Source: Stylophora pistillata (lineage: Eukaryota). From it: DNA of 64,000 nucleotides. The DNA lies in the NCBI RefSeq assembly GCF_002571385.2, contig NW_019217914.1, forward strand, positions 447,597 through 511,596, given 5' to 3'. The notes beneath the pieces were generated by a model. That model was not told the origin of the DNA. It did no database searches and saw nothing but the letters and a program-made list of their open reading frames with translations. Made by a program: the position numbers and the translations under genes. Positions within the stretch are counted from its first letter, which is position 1. Each line of letters begins with the position of its first letter. This document shows positions 15,681-37,100 of this stretch, one piece after another.

Positions 15681-17895
15681 CGTAAAAAAGATCGGAAAAC
15701 CACAAACCACGTTAGCTTATGATCCGCTCAGACTACAAGCTCCGAAGACTCAGCTTAGAACTATGAAAAAAAGAGTTTTTAGGCGGTTGTTGTTAAGAAA
15801 ATTCCTCCGTCCTGTTCCGTCTCAGCGATGAATGAATCTTGAAGCAGTTTTGAGTCAAGTTCTAAACGACTTTAATACATAGAAGCTCGACCAAAATGAT
15901 AATTAATTGCAGCGTTTGATGAGCCGGCGATAAGTACGACAGGTGTCCATAAAAACAATTAGTAACAAGGCAACATTTAAGTTCAACAGTTACGCTTTTG
16001 TTTGGTGTTTCATAGCTTTTTAGCCTCAATGAAATTACACTCGGCCTAACGCACCGTGGCAAAAACGTACCAGGCACCGCGAGCCTGAATGTTTCCTTAT
16101 TTGTATTACAAAATAAATGCCCTCATAAATCACAAGGCAATGAGCCAAAATCTTAGTCGTTGAAACCATCGTTGCTAACGCAACTGTTCTATTCTGAGAG
16201 AAGAACAGAGTAAAAAAAGTCCATTTAAAAAGTTAATTGGACTCTTTTCATTCTTCCGACATCTTAGAACAAATTTCCGCTAAGATTATTTAAGAAGTAA
16301 TAAAAATTACAGGAAACGACATTATTGATCTATTTAACGAATATTGCACCCTTCAGGTCTGGAGTGGCGTTACTTAGTGCACAGATAACACATAGCTTTC
16401 TACCAGACAGAAAGGTGTTAAACGAAAATCGCCTGAAATTAGATGTTTCTTTTCTGTAGCGGACTACCGGAAAATAAATCGTGATAAATCCCTCATTTCC
16501 TGTTGAACATTGGTTGCATTTACTGGGTTGTTTGGTTATGGAATTACAAACTCAAATGTTTTCTGTGTCAAACCACTAAAAAAATAAAAATTAGGATAGT
16601 TTACTCACATCCTTTTAAATGCAAATTATAAGGTAACCCGATTAAGTGGTAAGATAGATTAGTGATTACGTGAAACATCTTTCTGCAGTTCTGTACATTT
16701 AACTCTGGATAATCGTTTAGTGATACCCTTTTCTCCCGAAAAAACTAAGAACCCTGTTTTTTTCCGGTACTATCACTTATCTATCTCGGATCTTGCAAAA
16801 TAAATAAATAGATAAAATAATATTATGAAAGATTTTATTTTTGATCACCACTGTGCGAAAAAAAAAGCGGGTGATTTCAGGATAACGTAGATAACGTGGG
16901 CAGCTGGAAAAAATAACAATCTGTAGAAACAGGGTAGTGTTATGAAAACCTAAATGATATGGTTTACCGCAAACCACAAAAATTTATTACACCGAGTTTC
17001 ATCGCGATTTTCTCTTATACCGGTTTTTTTTTTCTTGGGCCGAACTCTTTCTCCTTAGGTGACTAAACTATATCACATGACAGTAATTCTAAATTCACTT
17101 CAGTGTCACCGTACCTGCAAATCTTGAGCCACCTGAGGTTATCCTTATCACTACATGTAACTAAGAGTAGCAAATTGTATGCTGAGAAGTGCTGCTAATC
17201 AAACGAAACAATGAACAGACACAATAATAGGTTGTGGTTCAACGCAAAAAAAAAAAAAAAAAAATTCGAAGAAGAATAGTTGCTACGAAAGTTCTCTCCG
17301 TCGTATTTGTTTTTCTGTCGCGAGTCGACCTTTGAGATTTGAAATCGACCTTTGACCTTTGAGACATGGCTTCCTTTGAGACCGTTGACCTTTGAGATTT
17401 GAAATCGTGGAAAGGAGGCATCTTACTGTTTATGACACATGCCTCATTTCTAGCATTCCTGCTACACCCAACACGTATATAAGCATGATGGACCTTAGTC
17501 TTCTTAGTTTTCTTTACATCATAAGACCACTCTGAAAACTGATGCAGTCTACACTGGAGTTACTCAGAATACCACATATCTTGATAAAACACCTACGGCG
17601 TTAATTTCAGACTTGGCTCAGTGAATCTGGTGTTTTTACGAAGCTTACGTTTTATTCATTTATGGTACAGCGTTTATGAAAGGTGTTGTGCAATTTGCTA
17701 CCATTTCTTTAAGTTTATCTTTTTAACACCTGTCCTCCGAGACCCACGGGTGTTTAGTAAAAACGGCATGATTGATTCCTCCCCCCCCCCAACCTTGGTC
17801 CAGCTCCCTTCCTGAAGTTGACTACAAGGTTGGCCAGAGACAGTATAATTTCTTGTCAGAGAAACTTTTTTCAAATCGTATTCAGAAGTCGAGGT

Positions 17896-19302: not shown

Positions 19303-20364
19303 ATGGAAATCAACATCACAGAAGAATATTCTCATCGTCATTCGGCGGCGACCTTCATCACAACTCGGGACATTATTTTTGCAGTGCTGTACTCAATTAT
19401 TGCCGTTCCAGGGGTAATAGGTAATGCTATCGTGATTACCATAGTGCGAAAAACGCCTTCAATGCACACGACCACGAACTATCTCCTCTTAAACTTAGCC
19501 GTGGCCGATTTATTGACATTGCTCCTCTGTCCTGGTCCATACGATTTAGCTCTGGTGCACGTTGACTTAGAAGGATTCACTGGGGATTTAATCTGCAAAC
19601 TGTTTGCGGGAAATGCAATTGTTCCGATCACCATCAACGCCGCCGTTCTTTCGGTTTGTACGATCGCCGTGGAAAGGTATCTAGCGCTTCTCAAACCTTT
19701 CCGCGCTAATCTAAGAATAGACAAAGATAAAGTGAAACATGTGATAGCAGTGCTGTGGTTGCTTGCCTTAATCTCATGCATCCCAGATATTCAAGCCAAT
19801 ACGTACAATATCTCGTCATCCAAATATCCTTGCAAGCGTCCTTGGAGTTTGGATGAATATTTTCTTCACAAACCCTTCATCATCTTTACTTGTGTTTGGT
19901 TCGGAATTATTAGCTCCCTGATAGTCTTCCTCTGCTATTTTTCAATCATCCGTGGAATATATTTCACAAAAACAGTTTTCTCGGAATCAACGGTAACGGA
20001 GGCTGAACGGCAAGCAAAAAAACAACTAGGTAGCCTTCTTATCTGGTTGACATTTGTATTCGCTACCTGTTCTCTGCCATTTGCAATTTACTTTATGTTT
20101 CTTAGCTTCGTTGATGTTAGAACTGTAAAGGACAATTACGACACATTGTATTTATTTCACAGAATTTCTAGATTTGTTCTCTTCACAAATTCGTTTTTAA
20201 ATCCTTTATTGTATGCTTTACAAAGTTCAAATTTTCGAGATGGATTCAAATTAATTTTTCGTTTAAAACTCCTCCGCTGTAAGCCTTTGGCAAACAGGAG
20301 AAAGAGTGGAAAAAGCTCCAGTTCGACAGGTTTTCAGTTAAGTAAAGCCGGGAAAACTAGATAA
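19303..20364 (+). CDS. Intronless class A GPCR, 353 aa
   Basis: GN, NLAVAD, ERY, YPCKRPW, NPLLY. Confidence 0.93.
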   Translation: MEINITEEYSHRHSAATFITTRDIIFAVLYSIIAVPGVIGNAIVITIVRKTPSMHTTTNYLLLNLAVADLLTLLLCPGPYDLALVHVDLEGFTGDLICKLFAGNAIVPITINAAVLSVCTIAVERYLALLKPFRANLRIDKDKVKHVIAVLWLLALISCIPDIQANTYNISSSKYPCKRPWSLDEYFLHKPFIIFTCVWFGIISSLIVFLCYFSIIRGIYFTKTVFSESTVTEAERQAKKQLGSLLIWLTFVFATCSLPFAIYFMFLSFVDVRTVKDNYDTLYLFHRISRFVLFTNSFLNPLLYALQSSNFRDGFKLIFRLKLLRCKPLANRRKSGKSSSSTGFQLSKAGKTR

Positions 20365-21594
20365 AGGAATAAACCGGCGATCCCGTGCCAGGACGTAACC
20401 AACTAATGAATGATTATAAAATACAAAATATCAATCATGTTGTGTTCAGTTGCCGTAAAACCGAGTCTTAAGAGGTTTAAAGCTTATTTTAGAATTGTGG
20501 AGGGAAATAAATAAAATAAATAAGAGTGACAATTTTCATCCGCTATGCAAATAGTTTTCAAATTAAATTTTTCTCAAAGTTATTACCATACCCATGAAAT
20601 ATCAGGTAACTTGTATATCATGGATTACAACACTACTTTACCGTTGGTACTTTGAGGTTACACAAAAGAAGAAATTTTGAAAAAGCCCTCATTACAAACA
20701 CAACACATCATTTCCTGGTTAATTCCATGGTGTCTTCTTCATAATTCAAACTCGAAAAGCCGGCCCCATGTCTTTGAAGGTAAAGATGTTTTCAAACTGG
20801 GCGAGTTGAAAGTTAATATGAATATATTTTAGTTTCGTTTGAAAAAGAGAAAGTCATGTTTTGTTTTCTAGATAATGAAAATGCAACGCAAGTTGACCAA
20901 GAATCTAACAAATTTGCCATCAAGATAAAAAAATTACGTTACTTTCGTCATTTTTATTGCCATCTGCAACGTTAAGCGGCAAGTTCAGAAATGTGCAAAA
21001 TAACATACTAAATGAGGGAATGAATTTTGGTCATGGAAGTCATTTCCATAGAAATTCAAAAAACGGAGAAAAATTTTGAAAAAGAAGCAAACTGGAGAGC
21101 TAGAGAAATCCTTGAATTGGACCCAAAGAGGTGCATATACACAACTTATGTTTACTGTACGAGTTCCTCGATATAAAGCATTGACTGATTACAAATTAGG
21201 GAGCAATATGAAAGCAGGTGAAGCTATGACTGTTCTCTAGATGTGTACTTGCTAGATTTACTTAATACTGGTTAATGTGAAAACGTCCTTCAATTTTTGT
21301 TTTTCTGCTCATAACTTTTCATTGAGATCGATATGCTTGAAAAAATGTGGGCATATTTAAGGTGGCAATCTTAGCTACCTTAAATCTCATGCAAAATGGA
21401 TTCAGAAGGAGCTCTGAAGCCTCAAATAAACAGCTTACGGTTTGAATAACTTTTCTTTTACCTACGTCATGCTAACGTCGCAGCAGGTCCCACATTTGTA
21501 ATGTGGTGACTGGGGTTTAAAACACTTTAGTCCACATTAGAAGTTATGACCTCTCCTTAGAAAGAACTTGGGTCTTTAATGAGAGGTTGGCTAT

Positions 21595-21639
21595 GCAGCG
21601 CTGACGAGCTCTAAAAAGAGCGAAACAGCTTTCCACTGC
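21595..21639 (+). ncRNA. Type I hammerhead ribozyme motif, copy 1 (stem III mismatch)
   Basis: GCAGCG CTGACGA GCTC TAAAAA GAGC GAAA CAGCT TTC CACTGC. Confidence 0.8.
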
Positions 21640-21950
21640 TGCCGCTTCCAAGGAACCAACGCTGGGCATGCGTAGTTGCTTCTATTTGGTAATGTCTTCT
21701 CCATGCTGGAGACAGACACAGATGACCGAGTTATTGGGACCCTTGATATCCATTGATGACCGAGGTGGGATGCAACCAAAATCTCTCGATGTACTGTTGA
21801 AGACACTTTTCTTATTCCTACGTCATGCTAACATCGTAGCAGGTCCCACAGTTGTAATGTGGTGACTGGGGTTTAAAACACTTTAGTCCACCTTCGAAGT
21901 TATGATATCTCATTACAAAGAACTTGTGTCTATAATGAGAGGTTGGCTAT

Positions 21951-21994
21951 GCAGTGCTGACGAGCTCTAAAAGGAGCGAAACAGCTTACACTGC
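21951..21994 (+). ncRNA. Type I hammerhead ribozyme motif, copy 2 (degenerate cleavage site)
   Basis: GCAGTG CTGACGA GCTC TAAAAG GAGC GAAA CAGCT TA CACTGC. Confidence 0.75.
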
Positions 21995-22361
21995 TGCCGT
22001 TTCCAAGGAACCAACGCTACGCATACGTAGTTACTTTGGTTTGAATAATAATGACTTTTCTCGAAATATGCCAAGAGCTGATAAATCCCTAAATGTTTCT
22101 AGAATTTTATCCTCCCTCAGGAACAGCTGAAATTACCATATTGGCTCGGATATTTTGCTTTGCTAATCGCAAACTAATCTACCAAATATGGAAAAACGCC
22201 TACTTCATATAACGAGTGCCGGAAGAGGAAATATTTGAGTGCTTCAAGAACAATTGAACCCCAGAACCTTTAAACTGTGCTTTCCTATGTTCTCTCATTG
22301 AACCAAAGTGGTGTATCAAGGCCACATGTTGGGTTTATATGTGCCAAGCATCCTGAATACT

Positions 22362-22568
22362 TAACAAATGGTAAACACCACAGCGTAGGTTCCACAGCGT
22401 ACACTATTGAGTTATGGATGCACGCGGGAGGTTGCTAAGCACGAAAGAAGCGTAAGAGTCGCGCGAGGCGATAGCTGAGAGCAACTCTAGCTTCTTAAGT
22501 GCTTAGCAACCTCCCAAGTGCATCTCTAACTCAACAGTGTGCGCTGTGGTGTTTACCATTTGTTTTAT
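22362..22568. repeat. Long palindromic MITE-like repeat
   Basis: acaaatggtaaacaccacagcg / cgctgtggtgtttaccatttgt, with internal inverted arms gggaggttgctaagcac / gtgcttagcaacctccc. Confidence 0.75.
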
Positions 22569-22886
22569 AGCATGACATTGATACATTGTAGCAAAAGAGC
22601 TCCCTTTGATTTGCCACGTCACCCATAGCCAAATGGTGGACGCTGAATTGACCAATCAGAGCGTGCGCTTTACTTTGGTTACGTTATAATGTTTGTTGGA
22701 AGAGAGGATCAAGCTAAGACACCTTTTCCTCAGAAGGCCCAAGTCTTAGGACAGTGTCACTGAAGGTTTGTGAGCGCCCGAGTTGTTTGCGGATTGTGAT
22801 GCGTAAGTAATTGTAATTAACGGTGATAAACGAGTTTTCTTATTTTGGGCGCCGGGATTTCTTCCCCAGAGGCATTTTCAATACCT

Positions 22887-23314
22887 ATCGTAAATCCTCA
22901 AATAAGGGGAGGGGGGAGGGGGAGAATATTTTATTTCAAGTTCTTTGGGGAGGAAGCTTGTTAGAGGGGGAGGGAGCTCAATAGAGGGGGGTGTTATCAA
23001 TTTAGCCCGATGTTCACTTCCGGGATACAATAGGATATGATGTACCGTATTTATTCAAAAAGTTGTTCTCATTTAACATTTCTTATTTTTTTTAATTACA
23101 GCACTTGAATAAATTTATCGTACCTACTGACATGGAGTGTTATTTTGAATTTTTTTGAGGGGGACGGATTGGGGAGGGGGCTTAATGGAGGAAGGACTTA
23201 ATAATTTCCTTCCTATAAAGAGGGGGGCTTAAAAATTTCCTTCCTTTAAAAAAGGGGGGGACTTGTTAGAGGGGGTGGTTCATTATAGGGGGGCTTATTA
23301 GAGGATTAACAGTA
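22887..23314. repeat. G-tract-rich dispersed repeat (MITE family), related to 42205-42622
   Basis: Shared internal segment taaatt(t/g)atcgtac(c/t)tactgacat(g/t)gagtgttatttt; ends cgtaaatcctc / gaggattaacag. Confidence 0.6.
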
Positions 23315-23943
23315 TTTCAAAAATCGATGGGAGATTAATAGATAGCAAATCTTGAGCCGTGTATTTTTCTCAAGGGGATAACCCAAGGGACTTCGGCATA
23401 TTTTTCGCAAAAACATCTTTGCAACGCTCGAGTTATACGCATCACCATAATGACTAAGCTAGACTTAAATAGTAAAAATCGAACTTTTTGCCTTTGAGAT
23501 AAACGTCTTGTTTGAACTGACTATATATATTACAAGAGATGCGACTCTTTGCCACTTGATTACAGAAAAGAATGATCACCTTTGGAAGAAGACTCTTGTG
23601 GGGGAAACTTTCCAAAATTCTCCCTTGTTTTTTTTTTTTGCCGTCAGCTGTTCTAAAAAAAACAAAGTTCAGTTGACCGAAACATTTGAAGGACACAAGC
23701 CCGAACCAAAAAGAAAAAAAAAATGTTCCGACGTTGATGATGCCACTAACTGAATTGTCCATTATTTTTACTTAATTTCAATTAAAAATGTTTTTTTCGT
23801 CTACAAAACAATTAAGACCGTTGGTTCAGCAAGAAGCGTTAAATTACAACTATTAAGCATACAATTTTTTAGTCATAGCCGCAGCAGCATGAATCCCTGA
23901 AGGTTTTATAAGCACGCGATGAGAAAGTTTCAGCTATTGCATG

Positions 23944-24974
23944 TCAGACAGGTAACCATAGATTTTTGCTTCTTCCTAGGCTGGCCATGCTTTCTCTCCG
24001 AATGCGCTTGTAATCTTCAGAAATACTTTCTTGGCTTTTGTTTTCGATGTTCATTTCTTTGGGGCCAGCAGAGAAGGTCGTCGTGATTCGACACGATGAT
24101 GTCTTGAGGGAAGGAAAGATATACATCACAGTTAAACTTTTTACTCCTAAGTGTGCATGACCTTGAAGTTAATTCTCTTTGTAATACGAATTAAGTACCA
24201 TGCAAACCGGTAATGGGGAAAAAAAAAGGATCATGCCAACTAAAGGATATCATTTGATCAAAGGGCAAATTCTTAGAATGTACATGGTAAGAAATGAATG
24301 GCAGACAGTAAGGAGAATTTCAGTTGAGATCCTGGCAACGAAAAGGTGAAACATAATCCCTACACAAGACTGCAAACACATCGTCTATGATACGGCTTGT
24401 TTCTATGTTGATCATAGTGTTTTTTCAGTTTTTTCTCTCAAAAAAATATCACTCACAACTGATTTTTCGCCGATAAAGACTAAATTTTGTAAAAACTACC
24501 ACGAAGCCGTCTTTCGTTGCCAAGAAATTTTTTGCACAACTGTATTATCGTCGCGACATTTATATCACAAGGTTAAAAAAAAGGCAATCGCCAAGACAAG
24601 ACTATTGTGAAAAAGTAAGGTGTTCAATAACCTCTTCCTTCTAAACAGGTTATGCGCTATCTGCCGCATCAGCAAAGAAAAACAAACAAAATACAAAAAC
24701 AGACTCATTGAAGAAACTAATCAACGCTTGATTAAAGAGGATTCTAGTCAATAAAAATATCTTCTACCTTTTTGTTATCCTCTCGATTTTCCTCCTGAAT
24801 GGGTCTTTTGTCGTAGCAAGGATCAAATGCTTTAAAATCGAGCGCCTTGGGAAATGAAGCGCAGCCACGAATTACCATGAAAACAGCAACAGCCAAAACT
24901 ACCGCGAGCAAGCTTGCTGGTTCAAAAGCGCTTTTGTACTGAAATTCAAAGGTAATGGTAACAGAACAGGACAT
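23944..24974 (-). CDS. Small single-pass membrane protein A, 121 aa, 2 exons (24974-24768, 24102-23944); unknown family
   Basis: A-rich start context aaaaaATG; hydrophobic SLLAVVLAVAVFMVI; phase-0 intron AAG|gtagaa...ttccctcaag|; homologous to gene B in both exons. Confidence 0.7.
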
Positions 24975-25104
24975 TTTTTCTCAGTTCCACGGCTTGCTCG
25001 TGATAGTCAATTCTTTTCTTGAGTTTGATTTACTAAGTTTCTCACGTAAGTCTTTCACTCAAATGGGTGCTTCTCTTTTTGAGTATTAAAATTCTGACAA
25101 GAAA

Positions 25105-25200
25105 AAACTACTTATTTGACGTTATCAGTCATTTTCCCAAACTAGCTTCAATATGATTGGCTGACTGAAAGACATCTGAAAGTTGGTAGTTTCACCTAAG
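25105..25200 (-). promoter_or_regulatory. Promoter of gene A (CCAAT box and TATA-like caaataag)
   Basis: Conserved with 29247-29340. Confidence 0.55.
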
Positions 25201-27379
25201 AACAAAATCGACTGTTTTAAGAGCGAAATATGGTGAAAAGCCACTAAAAAAATCATTGGTGAATTTTCTTTTTAACTTGGGAAAAAAATCGGGGTAAGAA
25301 ATGAAAGTTTTTCTAATGGCACTTGTCATGATATAAGACTGTTCTCTTTTCAAGGTCTTTACCATTTCCCAAGCGCCGCCAACGCAATCCTTGAATCAAC
25401 ACACCCCGCGCTCTATTACGAGCTATTTTAAGAACACAAAGTATTTTTAGCCAAATGTTACTAAATTTAGAGCCAGTTTCGGAAAATCCTTATTGTGCGT
25501 TTTTTAACGTATTTTCTTTATTTATTCAATTTATCATGATTGGTTAGGAAATTTTTAGAACTCAACAAATGGAAATAATTTCTGTTATTTTGAGAAGACA
25601 TCTAATCAAATCAACATCACGTATACTTCTTTTGAAGGTTGTAGAACGATTGGAGATAATTTCCTGCTTTTACGAAGATCAAGAATAGGGATAATACGAA
25701 ATGTTAAATTTACTATGAATTGAACACTAATATCAATTTTTTTTCAAGGGAAAATTGCCTAGTGCGTTAACACTGTGCAGTTCAAAAATAAAAAATAAAA
25801 AAAAGAAAAAGACAAATGAAAAGATATAAATCAACTATTTGCATAAACCAGTTAGGAAAGTAGATCTACATATTTATAACACGATTTGCTTAATTGTGCG
25901 AGACACATACTAAACCGGCTACTTTTCATCTTTTTTGTTAAAGTTTGTTCCATTTTACTCCACTGGGGTGAAATAAGTAATCAGGTCAAATCATCGATGG
26001 CCGCTCAAACATTTTTTTAGAAAGCTTCAGTGTTTAAAGGCAGCAGTTTTTCTCCTTTAGTGCGACCTTGGCTTTGTTGAAAGTGCTTAGCTCCTTTCGA
26101 TAACTTTCAGATACGTGACGTTGCGTAGAAACAAAGGTAAACAGTTTGTTGCCCGCGAACGACTGGGGAAGACAGATGCAACTAGGCCTTACTTGGCTTT
26201 ATGAGTAGTTTGGTTAGTCACGAATGGCTGCTAGCTCAGTGATAAAGGTTTTACCACGTATTGGAGTAGACAACTTTCTCTCGTATCAGATACAATGAAA
26301 TATATGAAGATTATATATTTTGAACTGCGTATTAGANTTTTTTTTTCGATATTTGTTTAAGCATACTAATGGTAGGGTTCATAACATCATAATCAAACGG
26401 CATACGTGTTGTAGTCTTGTTTGTACATGTCATGATCACGGGGAGCTTTTTATTTCTACCGAGGTTTCAATTGCCAAGAAACAAGACTGTCTATTAGAAA
26501 GCCCAACTTTGCAATTTATAAGACATGTGGTCACAATTTAATACTTCTATTTGCCATTCGGTAAAATGCAAAGGTGATACATCGATCGGCTAAATATCGT
26601 CATGAATTTAATCACGGACATTTTCATTCTGTCTCGAAAATAATTTATGAAATTCATAGGTTAGTACCTCGACGGAAAATCGAAAAAAAAAAAAAAAAAG
26701 GCAAAATATTTATTCTTCGGTTCCACTTGATTAGAATTACTCTCTATGTTTATTTTGAGATGTGATGCAACGTTAAAAAGCGTCATATCGTGTTCTCATT
26801 GACAATCGAAATTGAAAACAAACAATGAACAACTTTTTGGAAAGCATATTCGCGGCGGGAGCGGGGGGTTGTCACCTACTCACAAGATAATGCGATTCAG
26901 TTTTCCTGTAGAGGTAAGAAAATTTGGCGATATTCTTCGGGCCATTTAACAAGAAGTTTGGGCATAATTACTGTAAGTCATAGATCGCACTTTCGTTTAA
27001 TTTTCACTCGATAATATCGATGCACCTGTCAGCCGTGCGTGTTTTTTGCTCACCACTGGAGGTTCAACTGACGTGAATACTTTTCCTGATATCATCCTCT
27101 CCACCTCGTCATGTTCATGAGGATTATTTTACAGACCCTGCACCGAAAACTATAGATTTTTAAACAATTATCATACCTTGGGGTCTTTACTAGTAAAACT
27201 AATCTATGAATTGAATACGTATTCGAATATTGTTTTCAGGATGCATCAGCAGTAGGAAAGATTTACTGTATGATTAAGTCTCCTCTCACGTTTGTCGATT
27301 TGTACGAGGAACGACAGTAAATCTTCTGTCAGATCAGATCTTCCGTAAAATATTTTACAAATCTAGATCAATTTATATA

Positions 27380-27401
27380 GGTAATCACATGATTTCGGGT
27401 A

Positions 27402-27434
<33 letters not shown>

Positions 27435-27832
27435 TCAAAGCCTAACAAAATTGCATGAGCCCGTAGGGCGAGTGCAATTTGTGGTCTTTGAAAAAATTTA
27501 CAGGTGCTTATTTACTCCAAATTGCACGAGAAAATCATGTGATTATCTATTAATAATATACATGAAAAAAATACGAGGTAGTTTCTCATAACTTCGCAGA
27601 AGAAAAGCGCGCGCATCACGTGCAAAAATAATTTATTCAAACCCTGCAAGTGACATTGACCTTGACATTGACCAATCATTCTGACCAATCAGAATGTCTG
27701 GTTTGTTTCTTTCTTTGCACTGAATTAACCCTCTTCTGCACTGAATTAACTCTCTTCTGCACTGAATTAACTGAAAACTGCATTAATCTTAACCAATCAG
27801 AACTGAGAAATTTTTTCATGTATATTATTAAC
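27380..27832. repeat. Dispersed repeat with an internal palindrome and 21-bp tandem units (tgcactgaattaaccctcttc, about 3 copies)
   Basis: taatcacatgattt...aaatcatgtgatta inverted arms; tandem units at 27716-27775. Confidence 0.6.
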
Positions 27833-27928
27833 AAGGTTATTCTCACTTAGCTTCAGAAATCCGAAGAGGTCCGAGTGTTCTGGGGTTTTTACACGTTTTT
27901 AAGCTATTTGATAATAATGAACTTCTTG

Positions 27929-29137
27929 TTATCCCAGCAAGGACAACTTTTCCACAGAGGACTTGTTCTTTCTCTCTTCTTGATTTTTTGGATGGTGTCG
28001 ATAGCGTTCAGACAGTGAATGTTCTTGGGAAATTCTCGTCTGTTCGTCATTAATAATTTTAATTCCCTGGAGCTCTGTAACGCAAGCTGTCATAATTTCA
28101 GACCATGGCGAATTCTTAAAAAAGTAAGCAGAGAAATTCGTCATTAAAAACTCAGAAGAATGGCCATCTAGGAGCTAAGCAACACGGTGTTCTTTTAAAG
28201 GAGTAGCAAAAGTCACTTTTGACTAAGTTCAGTCAGAAGAAAATGACTGAAATGTAGAGACATTCACATCAAAGGTAACCTTTCACCAATATCCAACCCG
28301 CTGACAGGGACCGCTTTCAGCCCCCTACGTTTTTGAAAAAGCTTGTCCTGTTTTAAGCATGCTCCACGCCCCTGCCTTATCGGCTGAAGCTTACGCGTTC
28401 GTCTTTAGCCCTCCTTCCCCTCTCCCACTAAAAATAAGTTTGCTGCGCAGGCCCTGGGACTATCCCACATTTGACAATTGAGATTAATATGGAAATCAAA
28501 AGTTTTGTAACTTTCATTTTACAGATATTATACATGCACAGAAACTGATCAAAAACGAAATGAAATTAAGTTATCTTTAAAGCAAACAAAACTCAATCCA
28601 AGGGACAAAAATCAGCAAAATTCGCTTGATCATCTCTCGCGATGGAGTTATCAACTACTTCCCCGCACAAAATTAATACATTAACCAACAAACAAGTGAT
28701 AAGAACACTGCCAGAAACGTATCAGTAAATAGACGTATTCTCGATGTAACACCTAATTCTCATAGCTATTATAAAAGGAAATGTCTGTCGGTTTCTAAAA
28801 GAGGGAATTATTGCACAGATTTTGGAAATTTCATGGACGCTTCACTAAAAGGACTTACTGAGAATGTGAACTTTCTCAGAAGAAAAAAAAAAACGGAACA
28901 GCTACGTTACTTTTAAAAGTTATCACTTACGTTCCCACTTTTTTCTTCATTCTCCACAGGAATCGGTTTTGAGCAACAAGCGCTTGTATTGAAACGTTTA
29001 TCCACAAACGTCCTAATACGCCTATGATGTCGCTGCTTTACCGCAACGATGGCCACAAACACTAAAATAGCGATCAAAGCTGGTGTTTCTAAAGAATCCA
29101 TGAAGTTTATCTCAAAGCTGATAGCGAAAGAAAACAT
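27929..29137 (-). CDS. Small single-pass membrane protein B, 130 aa, 2 exons (29137-28931, 28114-27929); paralog of A
   Basis: caaaATG; hydrophobic ALIAILVFVAIVAV followed by basic KQRHHRR; phase-0 intron AAC|gtaagt...cttttttaag|; exon 1 is 69 codons, as in gene A. Confidence 0.72.
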
Positions 29138-29246
29138 TTTGGTTGAAATTGTAAAAAGCGATACCAATCTTGGATTGTTTAGTGTTTCACGCCTTCTTGT
29201 TTTGAACCGGCTTGAAACGTCCCTTTGTCGCTACTCTGTCAAAGGG

Positions 29247-29340
29247 CTACTGCTTATTTGACCGTATCGTTTATTTTCTCGAAAATTCCGATAATACGAT
29301 TGGCTGATTTGAAGACATCTGGAAGATAGTTGTTTGCCAA
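29247..29340 (-). promoter_or_regulatory. Promoter of gene B (CCAAT box and TATA-like element)
   Basis: cttatttgac...gattggctga-ttgaagacatctg shared with the gene A upstream region. Confidence 0.55.
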
Positions 29341-32300
29341 GCAGGACAACTAATTAAGTATTGGCTGTGGAATGTTTTGTGAACGAAGCACGCCACTTAG
29401 GGTTTGCGACTTTTCACGTTACTTTTTAAACGTTTTTGTATTGAGTACTCTGTGTTAGCATTTGGTAAAAAAAAAAAAAAGATTAATACTACAGGCTCTG
29501 ATCTTGTTAGATTCCCTTCATTCACGCTTAATTTTCCAGCATTATCATCATCAGAACTGTTGACAACATCCCACGCATTTCATAAGCTAAGTTTAGAGCT
29601 GTCAAACCCGATATTTTTAGCACAAAGTTACCGAATTTAGAACAAAATTTGACAGTCCCTAGTCAGCGCTTTCTATTTTGGGCCCAACTGTTTCAGTCTA
29701 GGCTAAAAATTGGGGAAATATGTATTTAATAGGGCAGTTTCAGCTTTGAATTGCAAAGAACGAGTTATTTTAACACGACTTACGAAAATTCACTCCAGGT
29801 GTAACACAAAATGAACGAAAAAGAACAAAGCATGCATTCAGTTCACAGTGATGAATTAAACAATGTGTTTCGAGAGTAGAGGGAAGGAAGGCCGGCCAGG
29901 AAAAAAAAATTAACCCGAACGTGATGGGAAAAACAATAAGATGAATGGATCAGATTAAATAAGAACCACGTAATCGCTATTCCATTTAAAGAAAGTAAAC
30001 AAGAAAATAAAGCATGACACAGCCATGTTGAGGACGCGTGGTCGATGTCTATTCAAGCACATCCGATTTCCTACTTTAATCAACTAAAATTAAATACGTT
30101 ACTATAAAATGTAAGTATATTGAGGCTTATAAGTTTAGTAAGCGTGGTGTTTGGTAAGTTGCTTTGCCGCATTCACTTGCAAACATATCAACAGGGTAGA
30201 GTTTCGTCACCTAATGGAATGATACGTAAGGTGATGTTACATGTTAGTGAAAAAGCAATCACGCGTGAATCGCAAATAAACAGAAGTAAAGACAGACTAT
30301 TTGTACCTCGAATCACAATGAAGCAGGCAATGATCAAAAAAAAAACAAAACAAACAAAACAAAAAAACTCAGAGATCTAACAGGAATCGAGACCGAAAAT
30401 GTTAGTTTCTCGCTTTGACCAATTGACCTGTAACAGTTCAAAATGTTAATTCCATCGATTTTGAATATTGTTTCCACTTCACTGTCTTGCTTCTTATCAT
30501 TGGCACCTCAAAAGGAAAACAAGTATTACCCATTTCCTTATGATATAGGAATCATTCACGACACTTAACAAATCGCGGAAGAAAGTCAAATCCAATATTG
30601 CTAATTATCAAGATATTTTGCTCATAGAGACATCTATTTTTCTCTCAATAAAACAGTGCGCGCCGCAACACATCACTCGGCACTGCGGTAAAAGTAATCA
30701 CCCATAAAATTTTCACAATTTCATGGGATAACGAGTTTAAAGAAGACAAGAAGGTCTAATATAAATAACGACCCTTTGATTATGTACTGAACGCCTATTA
30801 CCTCTAGCCGTTCGGTAGTTTATTCGTCTAATACGCAATCTTTAGATCAAATTGAAAAAAAAAGCGCTGGCTTTTATCGATAACATTGACTGTGTATTTG
30901 TTATGGAGAAAGAGGCCGTGGTACTTAACCTTCTTTAGGTGACTGTGAGTAGAGGGTGGGTAGAGAGCATTAAGTGGACCCTAAAAGCATTCGTCGAAAG
31001 TCCACTTAGCCGTGTATTTTGAGAGAAGTACGATGGGGGGGAGGCCTGATTCAGCAATACGGTTGATTTGGTAGGGATCGATAATGACTGTAATAGGTTA
31101 CACTTCAAGTCATCACTGCCCTGTTGTCATTTACTAATAAATGTTTCTGAAAAAAACACTGAGTAAAAAATTTATGTTGATAAGTGCAAAACAATTACCT
31201 GCCCGTACTCGCACATGTACCAGCTATTAGCATTTTTTTATTTCATCCCATCTCCTCTCCCTCCCTCTTTTAACTCCCCTTTCCACTTATCGCTAATACT
31301 ACGAGTTTGATAATCTGGTGCTGTCGAAGAAAACTGTTTAAGAGTGCTTGTTTCGCAAGCTGAGTTTGTTTTGCTTTCTTAAACAGATTTACTGACTTCA
31401 GCCTGTTTATAAACAAATCGTGTAACGATTTATTCATTCATTTTGTTCATAACCTATATTTTAAGCCAATCAGAACAAAACGCAATTTATCTGCGCTTGG
31501 TTTAACCATTTGCGTAATCAAAACTTCAATGTCTTGGATTTAAAACCCACTCCACTATGAAAAATATATTACACTATCAAGATGTTTATACATGAATTAA
31601 AGAGTACACACAAACACAAACACAAAAATACTTCAATAGAACCAATACTCGGAAAAACAGACGAGTTGTTCGTGTTGAACGAAGAATTTTAGGGATCCTT
31701 ATCAGTCAGGATTAATTTAGTCCTCATATGTTGTGTTCCAGGTTTGTTCTGAAAGGAAAAAAAAAAAAGAAGTTCTTAAACATAACCTTTTATTCTTCTT
31801 ACAGATTTGTATCAATTAACGAAATTCAAGGTTAGCAATGATTTTAGAAGCTCGGTTTACACATCGGTTAGAGTAATCTGACAAAAGACTGAGGCTTACA
31901 GAATACAGGACGGTAATAAATATAGTTGATTAGGGAAAGGACACATTGGTTTTGTTGTTACTTATCAAAAAGGCTGCATTTTTCTAGAGTATTGTGTTAC
32001 ATAGCGTGACAGATGGAAGGACATTCTCAGTGGGATTCATGTTTTGCTTATTCACCTTGTTCTTTTTTTCTGTACATGCCACTTTTTCGATGAAAGTATT
32101 TCTCACCCTGACGGAAAGATATGAAACTCCTCTCAACGTGGACCACCGATAGCGGTCCTAGCTTTTAAATTTTTTTCTATCAGTTCGCCAGAAACGTTGC
32201 ATCATTGTCCTAGATGTGGAAATTATGAGACTGAAAATGCTATGCAAGGTAGCTCGGGGCGATGGTGACGTATTTTTGCGCCCATATAAAAAACCATGCA

Positions 32301-34150
32301 AACATCTAAGCCGCCAACAAAAGATTTTAAGTACCGTTGCATTATCAGATACCATTAGTGTTCACCACCGAACGATGGATGCTGTAACTTTCTGCCTAGC
32401 CGAGTCTTAAGACTTTGATAAAGTTGAGAAGCTTGGTGGAGAATCGTGCAAGGCGTCAATACCCTCCTGTTAGCATTCCACAAGTTGCTTAAGAGGTATC
32501 ACATGGCTTACAGCACTCGCTCAATTTTGCGACAAATCGATTGGTTCATCAGCATTCGCCACATCAGATAGCGTCACAAGACTTAACCGCGAACAGTGCG
32601 CATTCGTGTAGATTTTTCAAGATTGCATACGAAATTTGACAGAATACGCTGTAGAACATTGAAACGTTTCCCCAAGATGCAAAGGTTGTGTTTTTAGTTT
32701 TATGACGTAAAAGAACTGAACTATTCACAACTTGTAAAAGGGGTGCAGTATCACATCACGTTGATAGAATAGTCTTTTTTAATCCACTTAATCAATCGAA
32801 ACAAAATCATACTCAACTGAATAGGTCTCCATTATTATTCTTTCTAGTCTTGTGAAAGTAAGCTTTTCCCAAATGATAACTCGCTTGTTAATGGACTTCC
32901 CCAGGGGCCTATGCTATCTAATATTCGTCACTGGTTACGAGAAAGTACTGACTTTCTTTTCGAAAAATGCAGCAACTGTGTCTTTCCCAGCTAATTCAAT
33001 GTTGGAACGTTTTCTCTGAGATTCTCCTAGTTTAGACTTTTTGTGCGAATGACTCCACTTTATTGGAAGCACATCTTATCAAAATATTGAGAGGGGGTTT
33101 ACTTACTGAAGAGTGGGTCGTTTTGTTCGGATAACCCCACATAAATTGAAGCACATCTCATAAAAATATTAAGAGGGTTGGTGGGGGGTTTATGGAAGAG
33201 TAGCAAACTAATGACAAAGAGGGACTAATTAGTAGGGTAAATTTTTTTTAGTGGGGGGAAGGCTTATAAGAGGGAGAGGAATTCCTAAGGGAGGGTGGGA
33301 CTTGTCAGATGGGAAGTTTTTTTAAGGAAGGGGGCTTATCAAAACGTAAAATGCCACTCAGTATTTCACTTCTGAACTGTGATATTACTACAACCATTAC
33401 TACTAACTTACACTTTTCGTTTAAACTGTATTCAGTTCACTTACCAAAGGAAAACTCAGATGTGTTACGAGGATGTGCGTTCTTGTATTTCTCTAAAAGT
33501 TCATGCTTTAAAAGCCCATCGAGATCCGGGTTTTCCTGCATAAAATTCATTATTTCATAACTTCAGAACAATTCTTTTAAATTTTTGTTCACTGATAACT
33601 GAATTTATTGTATAGTTATCAATGAAAGACTGTTCCATGACATGATATTGTCACTGTATTTCGAGCAAATGAAATATTTTCTAAGATTGTCCATATCATT
33701 TTTAAATATGCTGTATAAAATAAGCAGAACATTACTTATCTGCCTGTTGATAAAAACGTTATCTACCGGCGGCGACGATGTTTAGGAGTTATTCACTTCA
33801 TTTTCTCGTGAGCGATAATATCAGTAAAAAGATAGAAATAGTACCCATTAGCGCAGCCATGCAATATCCCCTTTGTATTATGAAATGTTTCATTATCTTT
33901 ACTCATAGTCATTTGATAAGGGTCTGTCATTCCCGTAAGGAAACCAAGACTTCTAAATGAAGTCTCCCTCGCATGCATACGATTGATAAACGGAAGGAAC
34001 TTTAAAGCCTTTCCATACGCTTCTGTAGTATACGTATCCTTACCCAATTCTCTTACCTTGGTGCTCCTTTTAGGGATTTAAAAAATGAACTATAGACTAA
34101 CTCTTCACATCACACACAAGCTTACTTTGAGTTAAATAAATTTTACAAAC

Positions 34151-37100
34151 CTTATCCTGTTCTCTATCATTTTCTTTCATATATTTGGCATTTCCCGAAG
34201 CATGTGGGGGCTTCAGCGCTTTCTGAGCCTGATTCAACGCCTTCACATCTATCCCCACAAGAGGCTGGCGGATGACAGGCTCCAGGACTTGACGAGGCGG
34301 AATTTGACGCTCTTGACGAGGTGACTGAGAATGCATTGGGATCGAGGCTTGGGGTGCGGCAGATGATAGGCTCACCTTTTTACCAGTGAGTAGCTGTTTG
34401 TAAAACGTCTGAAAAACGGGGAAAAAAATCAGTCAAGTTATCAGTGAGTGCAACTGGTAAAAAGATAACGTTTAGTACTGTTTGAAATCTGCGGTAAGGC
34501 ATTTCTTTATAATATTGATAATTTTATGAAAGTCAGATCGGATTTTCTGATCGCTATGCAATCAGACAAATGGGTAAAGGAGATTACGTTAAGCATTCTT
34601 TGCATACAAGCTAGTTTAGTTTTATTTACTCTGGAAACGTTAAGGCCCATTCTTGAAACGAGTATCAATAGTGAAAAAGCAAAGTGAAATAAGATGAATG
34701 ACATCCTCACACCTTCAGCCCAAAATAATCAGTGGCGTCCCGCACAGTGATAGAAAATAAATGCCTTTGATTTTCTTGGAAGAAGTCTCCAAATTTTTTC
34801 AGAATCTTTGCTAGTTCGTGACAGGCTTGATTAAGACAAATCTTACCTTACTAAGAGCTCGCACCGAGCGGGGAGAGTTGACATCTGCCTTGGCGAACTC
34901 CATCAGGACATGAAACATTTTGTCTTCATCCTCAATTTCCACCGGGGGATCTGATGGTAAGACAGCAATACATCACTCGAATGATTTTGCGCTCTGTGCG
35001 ACTTTGTAATAGCCATGCTCTCTTTAATAGATTCACGCATGGCAGATGCTTGTTATTAAATTAAAAGTATCAAATTGGGGAACAATAACGTGTGAAACAG
35101 TTGGTGATTTTAAATAATTGAGCTGTTTTGCGATAAACCTGTCCCTTTTGGTGCCGAGCGCCATCAACTTAGCTTGACCATGTAAGAATACATTGTTAAA
35201 AGTTAGGCTTTATACACTTTTTGAGCGATGAGCTTGTATAATGCCAATAACCTGCTTGCATTCTACAACTAACACACTGGATACGTCTATTTTCTGCGAA
35301 ATAACTTGGATATATCAACAAAGTTGAAGCGGTAAATTGGCCACCGTAACGATTACAAAAGCTGACGTTTCGAGCGTTAGCCCTTCGTCAGAGCGAATAG
35401 AGGAATTATGGGTTGTGTCTGCTTTTAAAGGCAGAGAATGGAGCTACGTTATTGGTGGGAACATGGAAACGAGAAAAACAAGAATAAATTAGTGGAATGA
35501 AAAGCGTTCGTTGATCCCTGTGGGATTTAGACTGCCGGTTTGAAAGATGAACTTTTGTTCAAGATTTTTACGGCTTTCCGTGCTACCTAAGTGTAAGGAA
35601 AGACCGCAGATTGCCGATGTTGCTTAGAATGATTAGGTCAATTAAAATGTCTAGCGACTGGTTTCGACGGGTCCTTGTCATTCCTTTCCGGGTAACCACG
35701 TTTATCGAAAAACGAAAAAACGTGGTTACTCCGTTTCTGTCGTTCAAGCTGGTTACCACCGCGCCCAACTTATTGATTGACATTCAGCACTACAAACGTC
35801 GCATAAGGAAGATTCCGACCGCATTCCATTCACTCTCACGTTTCACCCTCACAACCACTCAGTTAAATCGATCATTCTTAAAAACTTTAAATTACTTCAA
35901 AACGATCCAGAGACAAGCACTATCTTTTCGCAGCCTCCGCTCATTTCATTCAAACGCGACAAAAACATAGGCAATTTTTTGGTCAGAAGTTCTTTTCAGA
36001 CTAATGACCAACCAGGCACTTTTAAATGCGCTCGTGCACGATGCAAAACGTGTCCTTTCATTCACAACACTGATAAAATATCGGGACCTAAACGATCCAT
36101 TAAGATCACCGATCACTTCACGTGCACCTCCGCCAATGTAATCTATTGCATAACTTGTACTTATTGCAAAAAGATATACATCGGCGAAACAGGCAGAAGA
36201 CTAGGTGACCGATTCCGAGAACACCTTCGAGACGTGGAAAGGAATGACAAGGACACGTCGAAACCAGTCGCTAGACATTCTAATTTACCTAATCATTCCA
36301 AACATATGGCAATCTGAGGTCTTTCCTTACACTTAGGTAGCACGGAAAGCCGTAAAAATCTTGAACTAAAGCTCATCTTTCAAACCGGCAGTCTAAATCC
36401 CACAGGGATCAACGAACGCTTTTCATTCCACTAATTTATTCTTGTTTTTCTCGTTGCCATGTTCCCACCAATAACGTAGCTCCATTTTCTGCCTTTAAAA
36501 GCACACACAACCCACATTTCCTCTATTCGCTCCGACGAAGGGCTAACGCTCGAAACGTCAGCTTTTGTAATCGTTACGGTGGCCAATTTACCACTTCAAC
36601 TTTGTTGATATATCCAAGTTATTTCGTTACTCCCACCGACGCAGCCCCAAACAGTTTCTTTCGAAACTATCAGCCTATTTTCTGCGAAAGACTGACTGAG
36701 TTTGCTGCTATACTCTATTGACAAACAATTTACCTTACTTCAACGCTGACACACTCACCATGTGATGGAGGATTTATGTAAGGGTGAGCCAACAACTGAG
36801 GGATGGTATAACGCTCCTTGGGATTCCGGAGAAGACAACCCTAAAAATACCAGGAAAGGCAAACAGTCACACAGGAGACGGCTGAACAGGTGTGATGTTT
36901 TTCTTTTTGGTTTTTGGGGCGAGCAGAAGCAAGTGCAAAGGGTGGAATCACACGCGAGAAGAGCACTCGCCTCGCGTTGCGTGTCATTCGCGCAGAGTTC
37001 TCACTTCTGCTCGTCGGAAAAACGCTAAAAAGTGGCCTTTCTTTAGACATCAATGGACGAGGGGAGTTCTTTCAGGTTTGTAAATAGACACGATCATTTT

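What the first reader, a model, noticed from the sequence alone, without database searches (positions are those of the whole stretch)
23944..29137. Hidden tandem pair of two-exon genes for an unrecognised small membrane-protein family
Seen: four short ORFs in the track resolve into two paralogous genes. Both first exons are exactly 69 codons and align (ITFEFQYKSAFEPASLLAVVLAVAV vs ISFEINFMDSLETPALIAILVFVAI; RPIQEENRE vs KPIPVENEE). Both end at a phase-0 GT donor. Both second exons follow a polypyrimidine-AG acceptor and align (SQE-SISEDYKR vs SQEHSLSERYRH). Protein similarity and intron position persist although the DNA has diverged, which implies selection. Inference: short N-terminus, one TM or signal anchor, and a basic, disordered tail. 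Their position beside a GPCR cluster raises an MRAP/RAMP-like accessory role, but that is speculation. Intron retention would give short 76- and 74-aa isoforms, both ending V-x-D-x-F.
Basis: partly seen in the sequence, partly recalled or inferred. Interest (0 to 1): 0.8.

Follow-up and report, generated by a model that had tools for sequence, protein, structure and literature searches.

The report
Coral-only small membrane-protein gene pair
Two neighbouring two-exon genes in this stony-coral genome encode members of a small single-pass membrane-protein family that is conserved across stony corals, has no name and no known function, and is listed elsewhere only as "hypothetical protein".

Summary
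Gene B (exon 1 28931-29137, exon 2 27932-28114, minus strand) and gene A (24768-24974, 23947-24102) are paralogues.

- **Splicing:** an RNA contig from a poly-A library joins 28932 to 28114, the predicted B junction. Gene A had no spliced RNA in the four runs laid.
- **Orthologues:** both genes lie in the same order (kinase, B, A, GPCR) in coral metagenome scaffolds. Exons are 83-90% identical against 71-73% for introns, GT/AG sites are kept, and pooled dN/dS is 0.35-0.56.
- **Family:** an exon-1 profile finds 24 relatives among 1.84 billion proteins.
- **Independent models:** three stony corals have annotated homologues. Those of Desmophyllum pertusum and Porites harrisoni, the two checked, have the same phase-0 intron.
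- **Other databases:** Pfam and PDB give nothing.

The proteins have about 19 outside residues, one transmembrane helix, a basic stretch, an invariant P-x-P-x-E-N acidic motif and a C-terminal helix. In most members, A included, that helix holds a Y-K-R-L type motif; B has lost the tyrosine. I read them as N-out/C-in membrane proteins with a sorting or adaptor tail, which is inference. The MRAP/RAMP idea rests on synteny alone and was not tested. The family is real but of modest interest.

The parts
29298..29321 (-). Gene B upstream element: E-box (CAGATG) followed 12 nt later by a CCAAT box, about 166 nt before the ATG
   Evidence: The same composite lies 150-190 nt upstream of 9 of the 11 family genes examined in 7 loci; one has CAGGTG instead and L017 has only the CCAAT box. 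The 24-nt pattern occurs only at these two genes in the 398-Mb genome. It lies inside the low-depth RNA contigs, so promoter versus 5' UTR is unresolved.
28931..29137 (-). Gene B exon 1 coding part, 69 codons from the ATG at 29137. Holds the N-terminal about 18 residues, the TM helix, a basic stretch and the P-I-P-V-E-N-E-E motif.
   Evidence: It is 80% identical in protein to the L004 orthologue and scores E 1.8e-37 against the exon-1 profile. RNA contigs cover it.
29039..29083 (-). Gene B transmembrane segment (residues about 19-33)
   Evidence: Hydropathy maximum. Flank charges are -2 on the N side and +6 on the C side.
28943..28966 (-). Gene B conserved cytosolic motif P-I-P-V-E-N-E-E
   Evidence: The first P, the E and the N are invariant in 26 aligned family members.
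28115..28930 (-). Gene B intron (816 nt, GT..AG, phase 0)
   Evidence: The X2 poly-A RNA contig joins 28932 to 28114 with one changed letter at 28931. Donor and acceptor are conserved in L004. Identity to L004 is 71% against 83-87% for the exons.
27929..28114 (-). Gene B exon 2 coding part (61 codons plus stop 27929-27931). The family core E-L-Q-G-I-K-I-I-N is present, the ancestral Tyr is replaced by His, and the tail is lengthened.
   Evidence: The L004 orthologue differs by one in-frame 3-nt indel and a later stop.
25155..25178 (-). Gene A upstream element: E-box plus CCAAT box, about 186 nt before the ATG
24768..24974 (-). Gene A exon 1 coding part, 69 codons from the ATG at 24974
   Evidence: It is 78% identical in protein to the L004 orthologue and scores E 2.8e-34 against the profile. 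There was no RNA depth in the four runs.
24870..24917 (-). Gene A transmembrane segment (residues about 20-35)
   Evidence: Hydropathy maximum with a positive C-side flank.
24103..24767 (-). Gene A intron (665 nt, GT..AG, phase 0). Inferred, not seen in RNA.
   Evidence: Donor and acceptor are conserved in L004. The intron position is the same in annotated homologues. Identity to L004 is 73% against 85-90% for the exons.
23944..24102 (-). Gene A exon 2 coding part (52 codons plus stop 23944-23946) with the family core K-E-M-N-I-E-N ... I-S-E-D-Y-K-R-I
   Evidence: The stop is at the same place in L004. The only RNA here is one 213-nt contig in X1 that runs 16 nt past the acceptor, so it is unspliced.
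24001..24012 (-). Gene A Y-K-R-I, a Y-x-x-hydrophobic motif in the predicted cytosolic tail
   Evidence: It reads Y-K/N-R/H/P-L/I in the A types, both Desmophyllum copies, L018, Porites and L019 B. The functional reading is inference.

Best explanation
These are two real protein-coding genes. They are tandem paralogues of a family restricted, as far as seen, to stony corals.

**Gene structure.** Each gene has two coding exons split by a phase-0 intron, and its own conserved upstream E-box/CCAAT element.

**Protein layout (A about 121 aa, B about 130 aa).**
- About 19 N-terminal residues with alternating hydrophobic positions, strand-like, predicted outside the cell or in the lumen.
- One transmembrane helix.
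- A basic juxtamembrane stretch that fixes an N-out/C-in orientation.
- A disordered cytosolic linker with an invariant P-x-P-x-E-N-(E/G)-E acidic motif.
- A short C-terminal helix carrying E-L-x-E-I-K-I-x-N ... I-S-E-D/E-Y-K-R-L-W-R.

**Mechanism (inferred).** They are small membrane-anchored proteins whose cytosolic tail is read by cytosolic machinery. The tyrosine motif and the acidic cluster would act as sorting signals or adaptor-docking sites. The short outer strand and the helix would contact an unknown membrane partner.

**History.** The duplication is old. Desmophyllum, L019 and L004 have the same pair in the same order. Gene A keeps the ancestral tail. Gene B in this lineage lost the tyrosine and gained a longer charged tail, which suggests divergence of function.

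**Shown:** the gene models, paralogy, conservation, purifying selection and splicing of B. **Inferred:** topology, motif function and any partner.

**Confidence.** The figure given is for the whole statement. The gene models and family membership alone stand at about 0.9, the topology at about 0.7, and the sorting or adaptor role of the tail at about 0.3.
For: **Splicing of B.** The X2 poly-A RNA contig joins 28932 to 28114.

**Orthologues of both genes.**
- GT and AG sites are kept and there are no frame-breaking indels.
- Exons are 83-90% identical against 71-73% for introns.
- Pooled dN/dS is 0.56 (p 0.016) against L004 and 0.35 (p 2e-8) against L019.

**Family.**
- The exon-1 profile finds 24 proteins at E<=1e-3 among 1.84 billion. 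All start at the aligned Met, and all read a Val (GTN) 6-9 codons after the E-N motif, which marks the donor.
- Spliced annotated homologues KAJ7372236.1 (Desmophyllum pertusum) and KAM7451259.1 (Porites harrisoni) share the intron position and the exon-2 motif.
- The suborders Vacatina and Refertina are both represented.

**Duplication.** Tandem pairs occur in L004, L019 and L015. The tree places Desmophyllum copy 1 with the B clade (support 90/92).

**Topology and structure.**
- Mean flank charge is -1.5 on the N side and +4.35 on the C side. The C side is higher in all 46 members tested.
- The AlphaFold2 model of P0035 has a helix at 22-44 (pLDDT above 90) and a helix at 100-115 (pLDDT 70-74). 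The rest is disordered.

**Upstream element.** It is unique in the genome.
Against: - Gene A exon 1 had zero depth in all four RNA runs. Its exon 2 was covered only by an unspliced low-depth contig.
- Gene A exon 1 alone gives dN/dS of 1.5 against L004 (3 synonymous and 17 non-synonymous changes). Selection shows only when exons are pooled or a more distant species is used.
- One RNA contig (X3) joins 28958 to 28121 through a non-canonical GT..TT junction that would shift the frame.
- The motif readings (Y-x-x-hydrophobic, acidic cluster) are short patterns recalled from general knowledge and have low specificity.
- The tyrosine is missing in B and in the third subfamily.
- The model puts the tyrosine inside a helix, which is not the usual bound form of such signals.
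- No function has been tested for any member.
Confidence: 0.65

Rival explanations
1. GPCR accessory subunits. The small membrane proteins would bind the neighbouring rhodopsin-family receptors through the transmembrane helix and control their trafficking or pharmacology.
For: - The family gene sits next to a 7tm_1 receptor in the window, L004, L015 (Desmophyllum), L016 (Porites) and L018.
- The receptor at 19303-20364 has orthologues at 86% (L004) and 77% (L015). The Porites and L018 neighbours are orthologues of the receptor at 14637-15710, at 64-66%.
- A trafficking-type tail would fit an escort role.
Against: - The evidence is synteny only, and the protein kinase gene on the other side is equally syntenic.
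- Neither L017 nor L019 has a receptor within the sequence held.
- The conserved upstream element is not shared with any receptor gene in the genome.
- The RAMP architecture (long ectodomain) and the MRAP features are absent.
- No binding test was run.
Confidence: 0.07
2. Phosphotyrosine signalling adaptors of the transmembrane-adaptor kind (like LIME1, SCIMP, LST1 or DAP10). The acid-preceded Y-K-R-L would be phosphorylated and recruit SH2 proteins for an associated receptor.
For: - The overall layout fits: a short ectodomain, one helix and a disordered tail with an E-D-Y-x-x-L motif.
- Language-model look-alikes include LIME1, SCIMP and LST1, all at scores of 0.84-0.89 or TM 0.41. The tool rates these as leads only.
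Against: - There is no sequence match to any such family.
- There is only one tyrosine motif, and it is lost in B and absent from the third subfamily.
- No charged residue lies in the helix to pair with a receptor.
- All look-alike scores are below the tool's 0.9 threshold.
Confidence: 0.12
3. Conserved non-coding transcripts or regulatory DNA whose open frames are incidental.
For: - Flanks and intron starts are also well conserved, at 82-85%.
- Gene A exon 1 shows few synonymous changes against L004.
- Expression is very low in the runs laid.
Against: - The frames, start codons, donor phase and peptide motifs persist in corals whose copies share only about 25-45% protein identity with the window's.
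- Pooled dN/dS is clearly below 1.
- Control frames give higher ratios for B exon 1 and A exon 2.
Confidence: 0.03
4. Only gene B is a working gene here. Gene A is silent or decaying in this species despite its intact frame.
For: - No RNA lies over A exon 1 in four runs, and only an unspliced piece lies over exon 2.
- dN/dS for A exon 1 against L004 is above 1.
Against: - The frame, splice sites, stop position and upstream element are all intact and conserved.
- dN/dS is 0.23-0.37 for A exon 2, and 0.29-0.33 for A exon 1 against L019.
- Four whole-colony runs at low read depth cannot exclude expression limited to a cell type or life stage.
Confidence: 0.1

Closest known systems
Hypothetical proteins KAJ7372236.1 (OS493_019680, Desmophyllum pertusum) and KAM7451259.1 (ABFA07_001302, Porites harrisoni); more distantly OS493_019693 (D. 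pertusum) and ACROYT_G003014 / G003012 (Oculina patagonica)
   Same: They belong to the same family by profile search. The first two, whose gene structure was checked, share the two-exon structure, the phase-0 intron position, the exon-2 core motif and the position next to the protein kinase gene.
   Different: None has a name or a function. The last three belong to a third subfamily (N-F-N-L-H-Y-E start, a different exon 2) that was not found in this genome.
MRAP and RAMP (vertebrate single-pass GPCR accessory proteins)
   Same: They are small single-pass membrane proteins. Here the genes lie beside a receptor cluster.
   Different: - RAMPs have a signal peptide, a large folded ectodomain and a very short tail. 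This family has about 19 outer residues and a tail of about 85-95 residues.
- MRAP's topology-setting basic motif lies before the helix. Here the basic residues lie after it in all members.
- There is no sequence match, and binding was not tested.
Small type III membrane proteins and transmembrane adaptors (SMIM36, stannin, TMIE, LIME1, SCIMP, LST1)
   Same: The layout is the same: a short N-terminal outer part, one helix and a disordered cytosolic tail with short linear motifs. They are the nearest clusters by language-model features.
   Different: All scores are below 0.9, which the tool calls leads only. There are no Pfam matches. This is a resemblance of class, not of family.
Tyrosine-based sorting signal of TGN38 (S-D-Y-Q-R-L) and acidic-cluster signals such as furin's (recalled from general knowledge, not tested)
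   Same: The family consensus S-E-D-Y-K-R-L in a cytosolic tail has the same Y-x-x-hydrophobic form with acidic residues before it. An acidic cluster lies upstream.
   Different: These are short motifs of low specificity. The tyrosine is absent from gene B. It is predicted to lie in a helix. No adaptor binding is known.

Membership tests
Unnamed stony-coral small membrane-protein family (OS493_019680 / ABFA07_001302 type) | Exon-1 profile match: Met start, alternating hydrophobic N terminus, one TM helix, basic stretch, P-x-P-x-E-N | tested here: met
   A scores E 2.8e-34 and B scores E 1.8e-37 against the profile. Relatives score 1e-35 to 2e-4.
Unnamed stony-coral small membrane-protein family (OS493_019680 / ABFA07_001302 type) | Phase-0 GT donor 6-7 codons after the E-N motif, followed by an AG acceptor and a short second coding exon | tested here: met
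   The junction is seen in RNA for B only.
Unnamed stony-coral small membrane-protein family (OS493_019680 / ABFA07_001302 type) | Exon-2 core E-L-x-E-I-K/N-I-x-N ... I-S-E-D/E-Y-K-R-L | tested here: met
   A matches in full, at E 6e-32 although it was in the profile. B matches at E 0.005 against a profile built without B types, and has His in place of Tyr.
RAMP | Signal peptide, folded ectodomain of about 100 residues with conserved cysteines, very short cytosolic tail | tested here: not met
   The outer part is about 19 residues and the tail about 85-95 residues. There is no Pfam match at E up to 10.
MRAP | Sequence match to the MRAP family, with the basic topology motif on the N-terminal side of the helix | tested here: not met
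   There is no Pfam match. The net charge is negative before the helix and positive after it in all 46 members.
MRAP / RAMP (function) | Physical binding to a GPCR and an effect on its trafficking | not tested
   No complex prediction was sent, because neighbourhood was the only ground for it. This needs bench work.
Transmembrane adaptor proteins (LIME1, SCIMP, LST1 type) | Family sequence match, juxtamembrane palmitoylation cysteines, and several tyrosine docking motifs | tested here: not met
   There is no Pfam match. There is a single tyrosine motif at most. Cysteines lie 3 to about 25 residues after the helix and are not at a fixed place. Feature scores are below 0.9.
Cargo with a Y-x-x-hydrophobic sorting signal | The motif present in a cytosolic, accessible tail | tested here: inconclusive
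   It is present in A and most relatives and absent in B. It is predicted to lie in a helix of moderate confidence.
Cargo with a Y-x-x-hydrophobic sorting signal | Binding to a clathrin-adaptor medium subunit, and tyrosine-dependent internalisation | not testable with these tools
   Needs a binding or uptake assay.

The most novel reading that the evidence does not exclude
The family is a coral-specific escort or accessory subunit for the adjacent rhodopsin-type receptors. The linkage kinase / small protein / receptor would have been held together since the two stony-coral suborders split because the pair works together. That would be an invertebrate, independently evolved counterpart of MRAP.
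Probability: 0.06. Interest if true: 0.75.

Novelty: new member of a known kind. Interest (0 to 1): 0.4.

Why it matters
It adds a well-defined family to the catalogue of lineage-restricted coral genes. The family comes with gene models, diagnostic motifs, a conserved intron, a conserved upstream E-box/CCAAT element and a stable genomic address.

Gene callers miss it often. Most database members are intron read-through ORFs, and the second Desmophyllum copy is not in the gene list shown for that record. The exon profiles could therefore improve coral annotations.

The unique upstream element gives a way to ask which cells express these genes. The tail motifs give simple mutational tests.

Until a function is shown, this is one orphan family among many. 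Only if it proved to partner the neighbouring receptors would it be of wider interest.

Tried and rejected
- **Pfam on all four exon peptides and on full-length homologues:** only sub-threshold noise. Hits were the TRIP13 lid (E 0.0044, 17.7 bits against a cut-off of 27), nematode Fn3, DUF1505, the ErbB1 TM segment and CaATP_NAI. All were rejected.
- **PDB profile search:** nothing at E up to 10.
- **Rfam over 20500-30500:** nothing.
- **Further copies in this genome:** the exon-1 profile and single-sequence searches gave only weak hits from hydrophobic segments, some with stops. The third subfamily's profile matched only A and B.
- **Upstream ATG as a conserved short ORF:** rejected. One orthologue has GTG, Desmophyllum has a one-base shift, and Porites stops after four codons.
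- **Shared V-x-D-x-F retention tails:** not conserved.
- **Literature:** one full-text search found nothing on this family.
- **Earlier scan notes:** none on this family.
- **Joined (spliced) window proteins:** never assembled or searched. All searches were exon by exon, by reference. Full-length analyses used the natural annotated homologues P0035 and P0045.
- **Fragment-based alignments (A7, A8):** MAFFT misplaces the last few exon-1 residues. A7 was not used further. The model from A8 is used only for helix positions.

Full report
**Setting.** The window is from a stony-coral genome. RNA and DNA runs holding it are labelled coral, and the assembly is 398 Mb in 5,513 contigs. Five intronless rhodopsin-family receptor ORFs lie at 1.5-20.4 kb. 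A protein kinase gene lies near 40 kb. An earlier scan note calls it TTK/Mps1; I confirmed only a kinase exon at 40051-40275.

**The observation.**
- The four ORFs are on the minus strand.
- Gene A starts at the ATG at 24974 and runs 69 codons to 24768, followed by GT.
- Gene B starts at 29137 and runs 69 codons to 28931, followed by GTAAGT.
- Pyrimidine-rich tracts and AG precede 24102 and 28114. From there the frames stay open to stops at 23944-23946 and 27929-27931.
- The exon-1 peptides align at 24% identity (E 2e-5). The exon-2 peptides do not align significantly as a pair (E 0.22).

**RNA.** I laid four RNA runs on 23700-29400, which is 5,701 letters and within the operators' limit.
- In X2, a poly-A library, a 216-nt contig covers 27958-28114 and continues at 28932. 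One changed letter stands in for 28931, which would turn the last codon from Asn to Lys.
- In X3, from a different study, a 756-nt contig runs from 29392 to 28958 and then from 28121 to 27801. This is a different joint, GT..TT, and it would shift the frame after codon 60. I cannot explain it.
- Depths are low, at 4-8.
- Gene A exon 1 has no depth in any run.
- Its exon 2 is covered only by a 213-nt contig in X1 that runs 16 nt past the acceptor. X1 is a random-primed library with thin cover over most of the region. The contig is therefore unspliced RNA or DNA carry-over.
- Splicing is shown for B and not for A.

**Orthologues.**
- Word searches with the read-through ORFs, given by reference, found close relatives.
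- Their contigs are coral metagenome scaffolds. In L004 the order is kinase, B orthologue, A orthologue, receptor, as in the window.
- The whole region aligns at about 73-77%.
- Exons are 83-90% identical, introns 71-73% and the 5' flanks 82-85%.
- Donors, acceptors and frames are kept. A's stop is at the same place. B's exon 2 differs by one 3-nt indel and a later stop.
- Against L004, Nei-Gojobori dN/dS is 1.55 for A exon 1 (only 20 changes), 0.39 for B exon 1, 0.37 for A exon 2 and 0.61 for B exon 2.
- Pooled over the four exons it is 0.56 (p 0.016) against L004 and 0.35 (p 2e-8) against the more distant L019.
- Selection on the proteins is real but moderate.

**The family.**
- A profile of five exon-1 peptides was scored against 1.84 billion representative proteins. 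It gave 24 hits at E<=1e-3 and ten at E<=1e-10.
- All share these features: the Met start; an N terminus with hydrophobic residues at alternate positions; a hydrophobic helix; a basic stretch, often R-R-Y-R-R; and K-P-(I/V)-P-x-E-N-(E/G)-E.
- A Val codon follows 6-9 residues later. That Val is the GT donor read through by prokaryote-style gene calling.
- Cluster look-ups and a second profile search found annotated members. They are KAJ7372236.1 (Desmophyllum pertusum, 116 aa), KAM7451259.1 (Porites harrisoni, 122 aa), two in Oculina patagonica and a second one in Desmophyllum.
- The first two are spliced two-exon models with the phase-0 intron at the same place. Their second exons carry the motif seen in A and B.
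- Desmophyllum and Oculina belong to suborder Vacatina and Porites to Refertina. The family therefore spans both suborders of stony corals.
- Exon 2 was located in five more genes. The consensus is (T/I)-S-S ... E-L-x-E-I-(K/N)-I-(D/E)-N-K-x-Q-x-x-I-S-E-(D/E)-Y-K-R-L-W-R.
- A profile built without B types still picks out B's exon 2, just downstream of B's exon 1. It scores E 0.005 in the window, 7e-4 in L004 and 4e-6 in L019.
- In L019 the B type ends I-S-G-E-Y-K-L-I. This fixes the register and shows that the window's B replaced the Tyr by His and read on into a longer tail.
- In this genome only A and B belong to the family.

**History and neighbourhood.**
- Tandem pairs occur in L004, L019 and Desmophyllum (L015). 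The second Desmophyllum copy is not in the gene list shown for that record.
- In the exon-1 tree the upstream Desmophyllum copy joins the B clade (90/92). The A types of the window, L004 and L019 form a clade (100/96).
- The duplication therefore predates the split of these lineages.
- The kinase lies upstream of the family gene in the window, L004, L015, L016 and L018.
- A receptor lies downstream in all five. It is the orthologue of 19303-20364 in L004 and L015, and of 14637-15710 in L016 and L018.
- This is stable micro-synteny on both sides. By itself it does not single out the receptors as partners.

**Upstream element.**
- An E-box (CAGATG) followed 10-13 nt later by a CCAAT box lies 150-190 nt before the ATG of 9 of the 11 family genes examined. 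One gene has CAGGTG instead, and L017 has only the CCAAT box.
- The 24-nt version occurs nowhere else in the genome except for one two-mismatch site without the E-box.
- It is not a conserved short ORF.
- The low-depth RNA contigs extend beyond it, so I cannot say whether it is promoter or 5' UTR.

**What the proteins look like.**
- There is no Pfam or PDB relative.
- Net charge is -1.5 before and +4.35 after the helix on average, with the C side higher in all 46 members. By the positive-inside rule this gives N-out/C-in.
- AlphaFold2 on the Desmophyllum protein gives a confident helix at 22-44 and a moderate helix at 100-115 over the tyrosine motif. The rest is disorder.
- The nearest clusters by language-model features are small type III membrane proteins and adaptors (SMIM36, stannin, TMIE, LIME1, SCIMP, LST1). 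All fall below the tool's threshold.
- From general knowledge, S-E-D-Y-K-R-L resembles tyrosine-based sorting signals such as that of TGN38, and the E-N-E-E stretch resembles acidic-cluster signals. This is a lead, not a test.

**Verdict.**
The family has no name.
- The most likely reading is a small N-out/C-in membrane protein whose cytosolic tail carries sorting or docking motifs.
- The receptor-accessory idea stays a low-probability speculation.
- **Not done:** No stretch of N was filled.

Noticed in passing
window 27364-27830: An insertion of about 470 nt relative to the related coral scaffold L004, starting about 100 nt after gene B's stop. RNA-contig depth is in the thousands in all four runs, with many loose ends at 27830/27831. 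It has an internal inverted repeat and no Rfam match. It looks like a dispersed, highly transcribed repeat (MITE- or SINE-like).
   Followed up: partly
window 26285-26329: A 45-nt piece with depth 40-160 in all runs and loose ends on both sides. It is probably a fragment of another repeat.
   Followed up: no
window 28121/28958 (minus strand): The X3 RNA contig joins these two places through a non-canonical GT..TT junction (depth 8). It would end gene B's frame ten codons after codon 60. Artefact, allele or minor isoform: not resolved.
   Followed up: partly
L015:14723-14932 and 15447-15569; L015:19328-20302 (minus): In the Desmophyllum pertusum record, a second family copy and a receptor 77% identical to the window's 19303-20364 ORF are not in the gene list shown for that stretch.
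   Followed up: partly
window 1505-2542 and 3954-4991: Two receptor ORFs are 98% identical in protein, which points to a recent tandem duplication.
   Followed up: no
window about 34100-35300; L015:4910-6355: Desmophyllum has an annotated 134-aa gene without a Pfam match between the kinase and the family gene. The matching stretch of the window is 80-83% identical to L004. It may be another small unnamed gene.
   Followed up: no
window 29298-29321 and 25155-25178: An E-box plus CCAAT composite, conserved upstream of nearly all family genes examined in seven loci and unique in this genome. It offers a way to find out which cells express them.
   Followed up: yes
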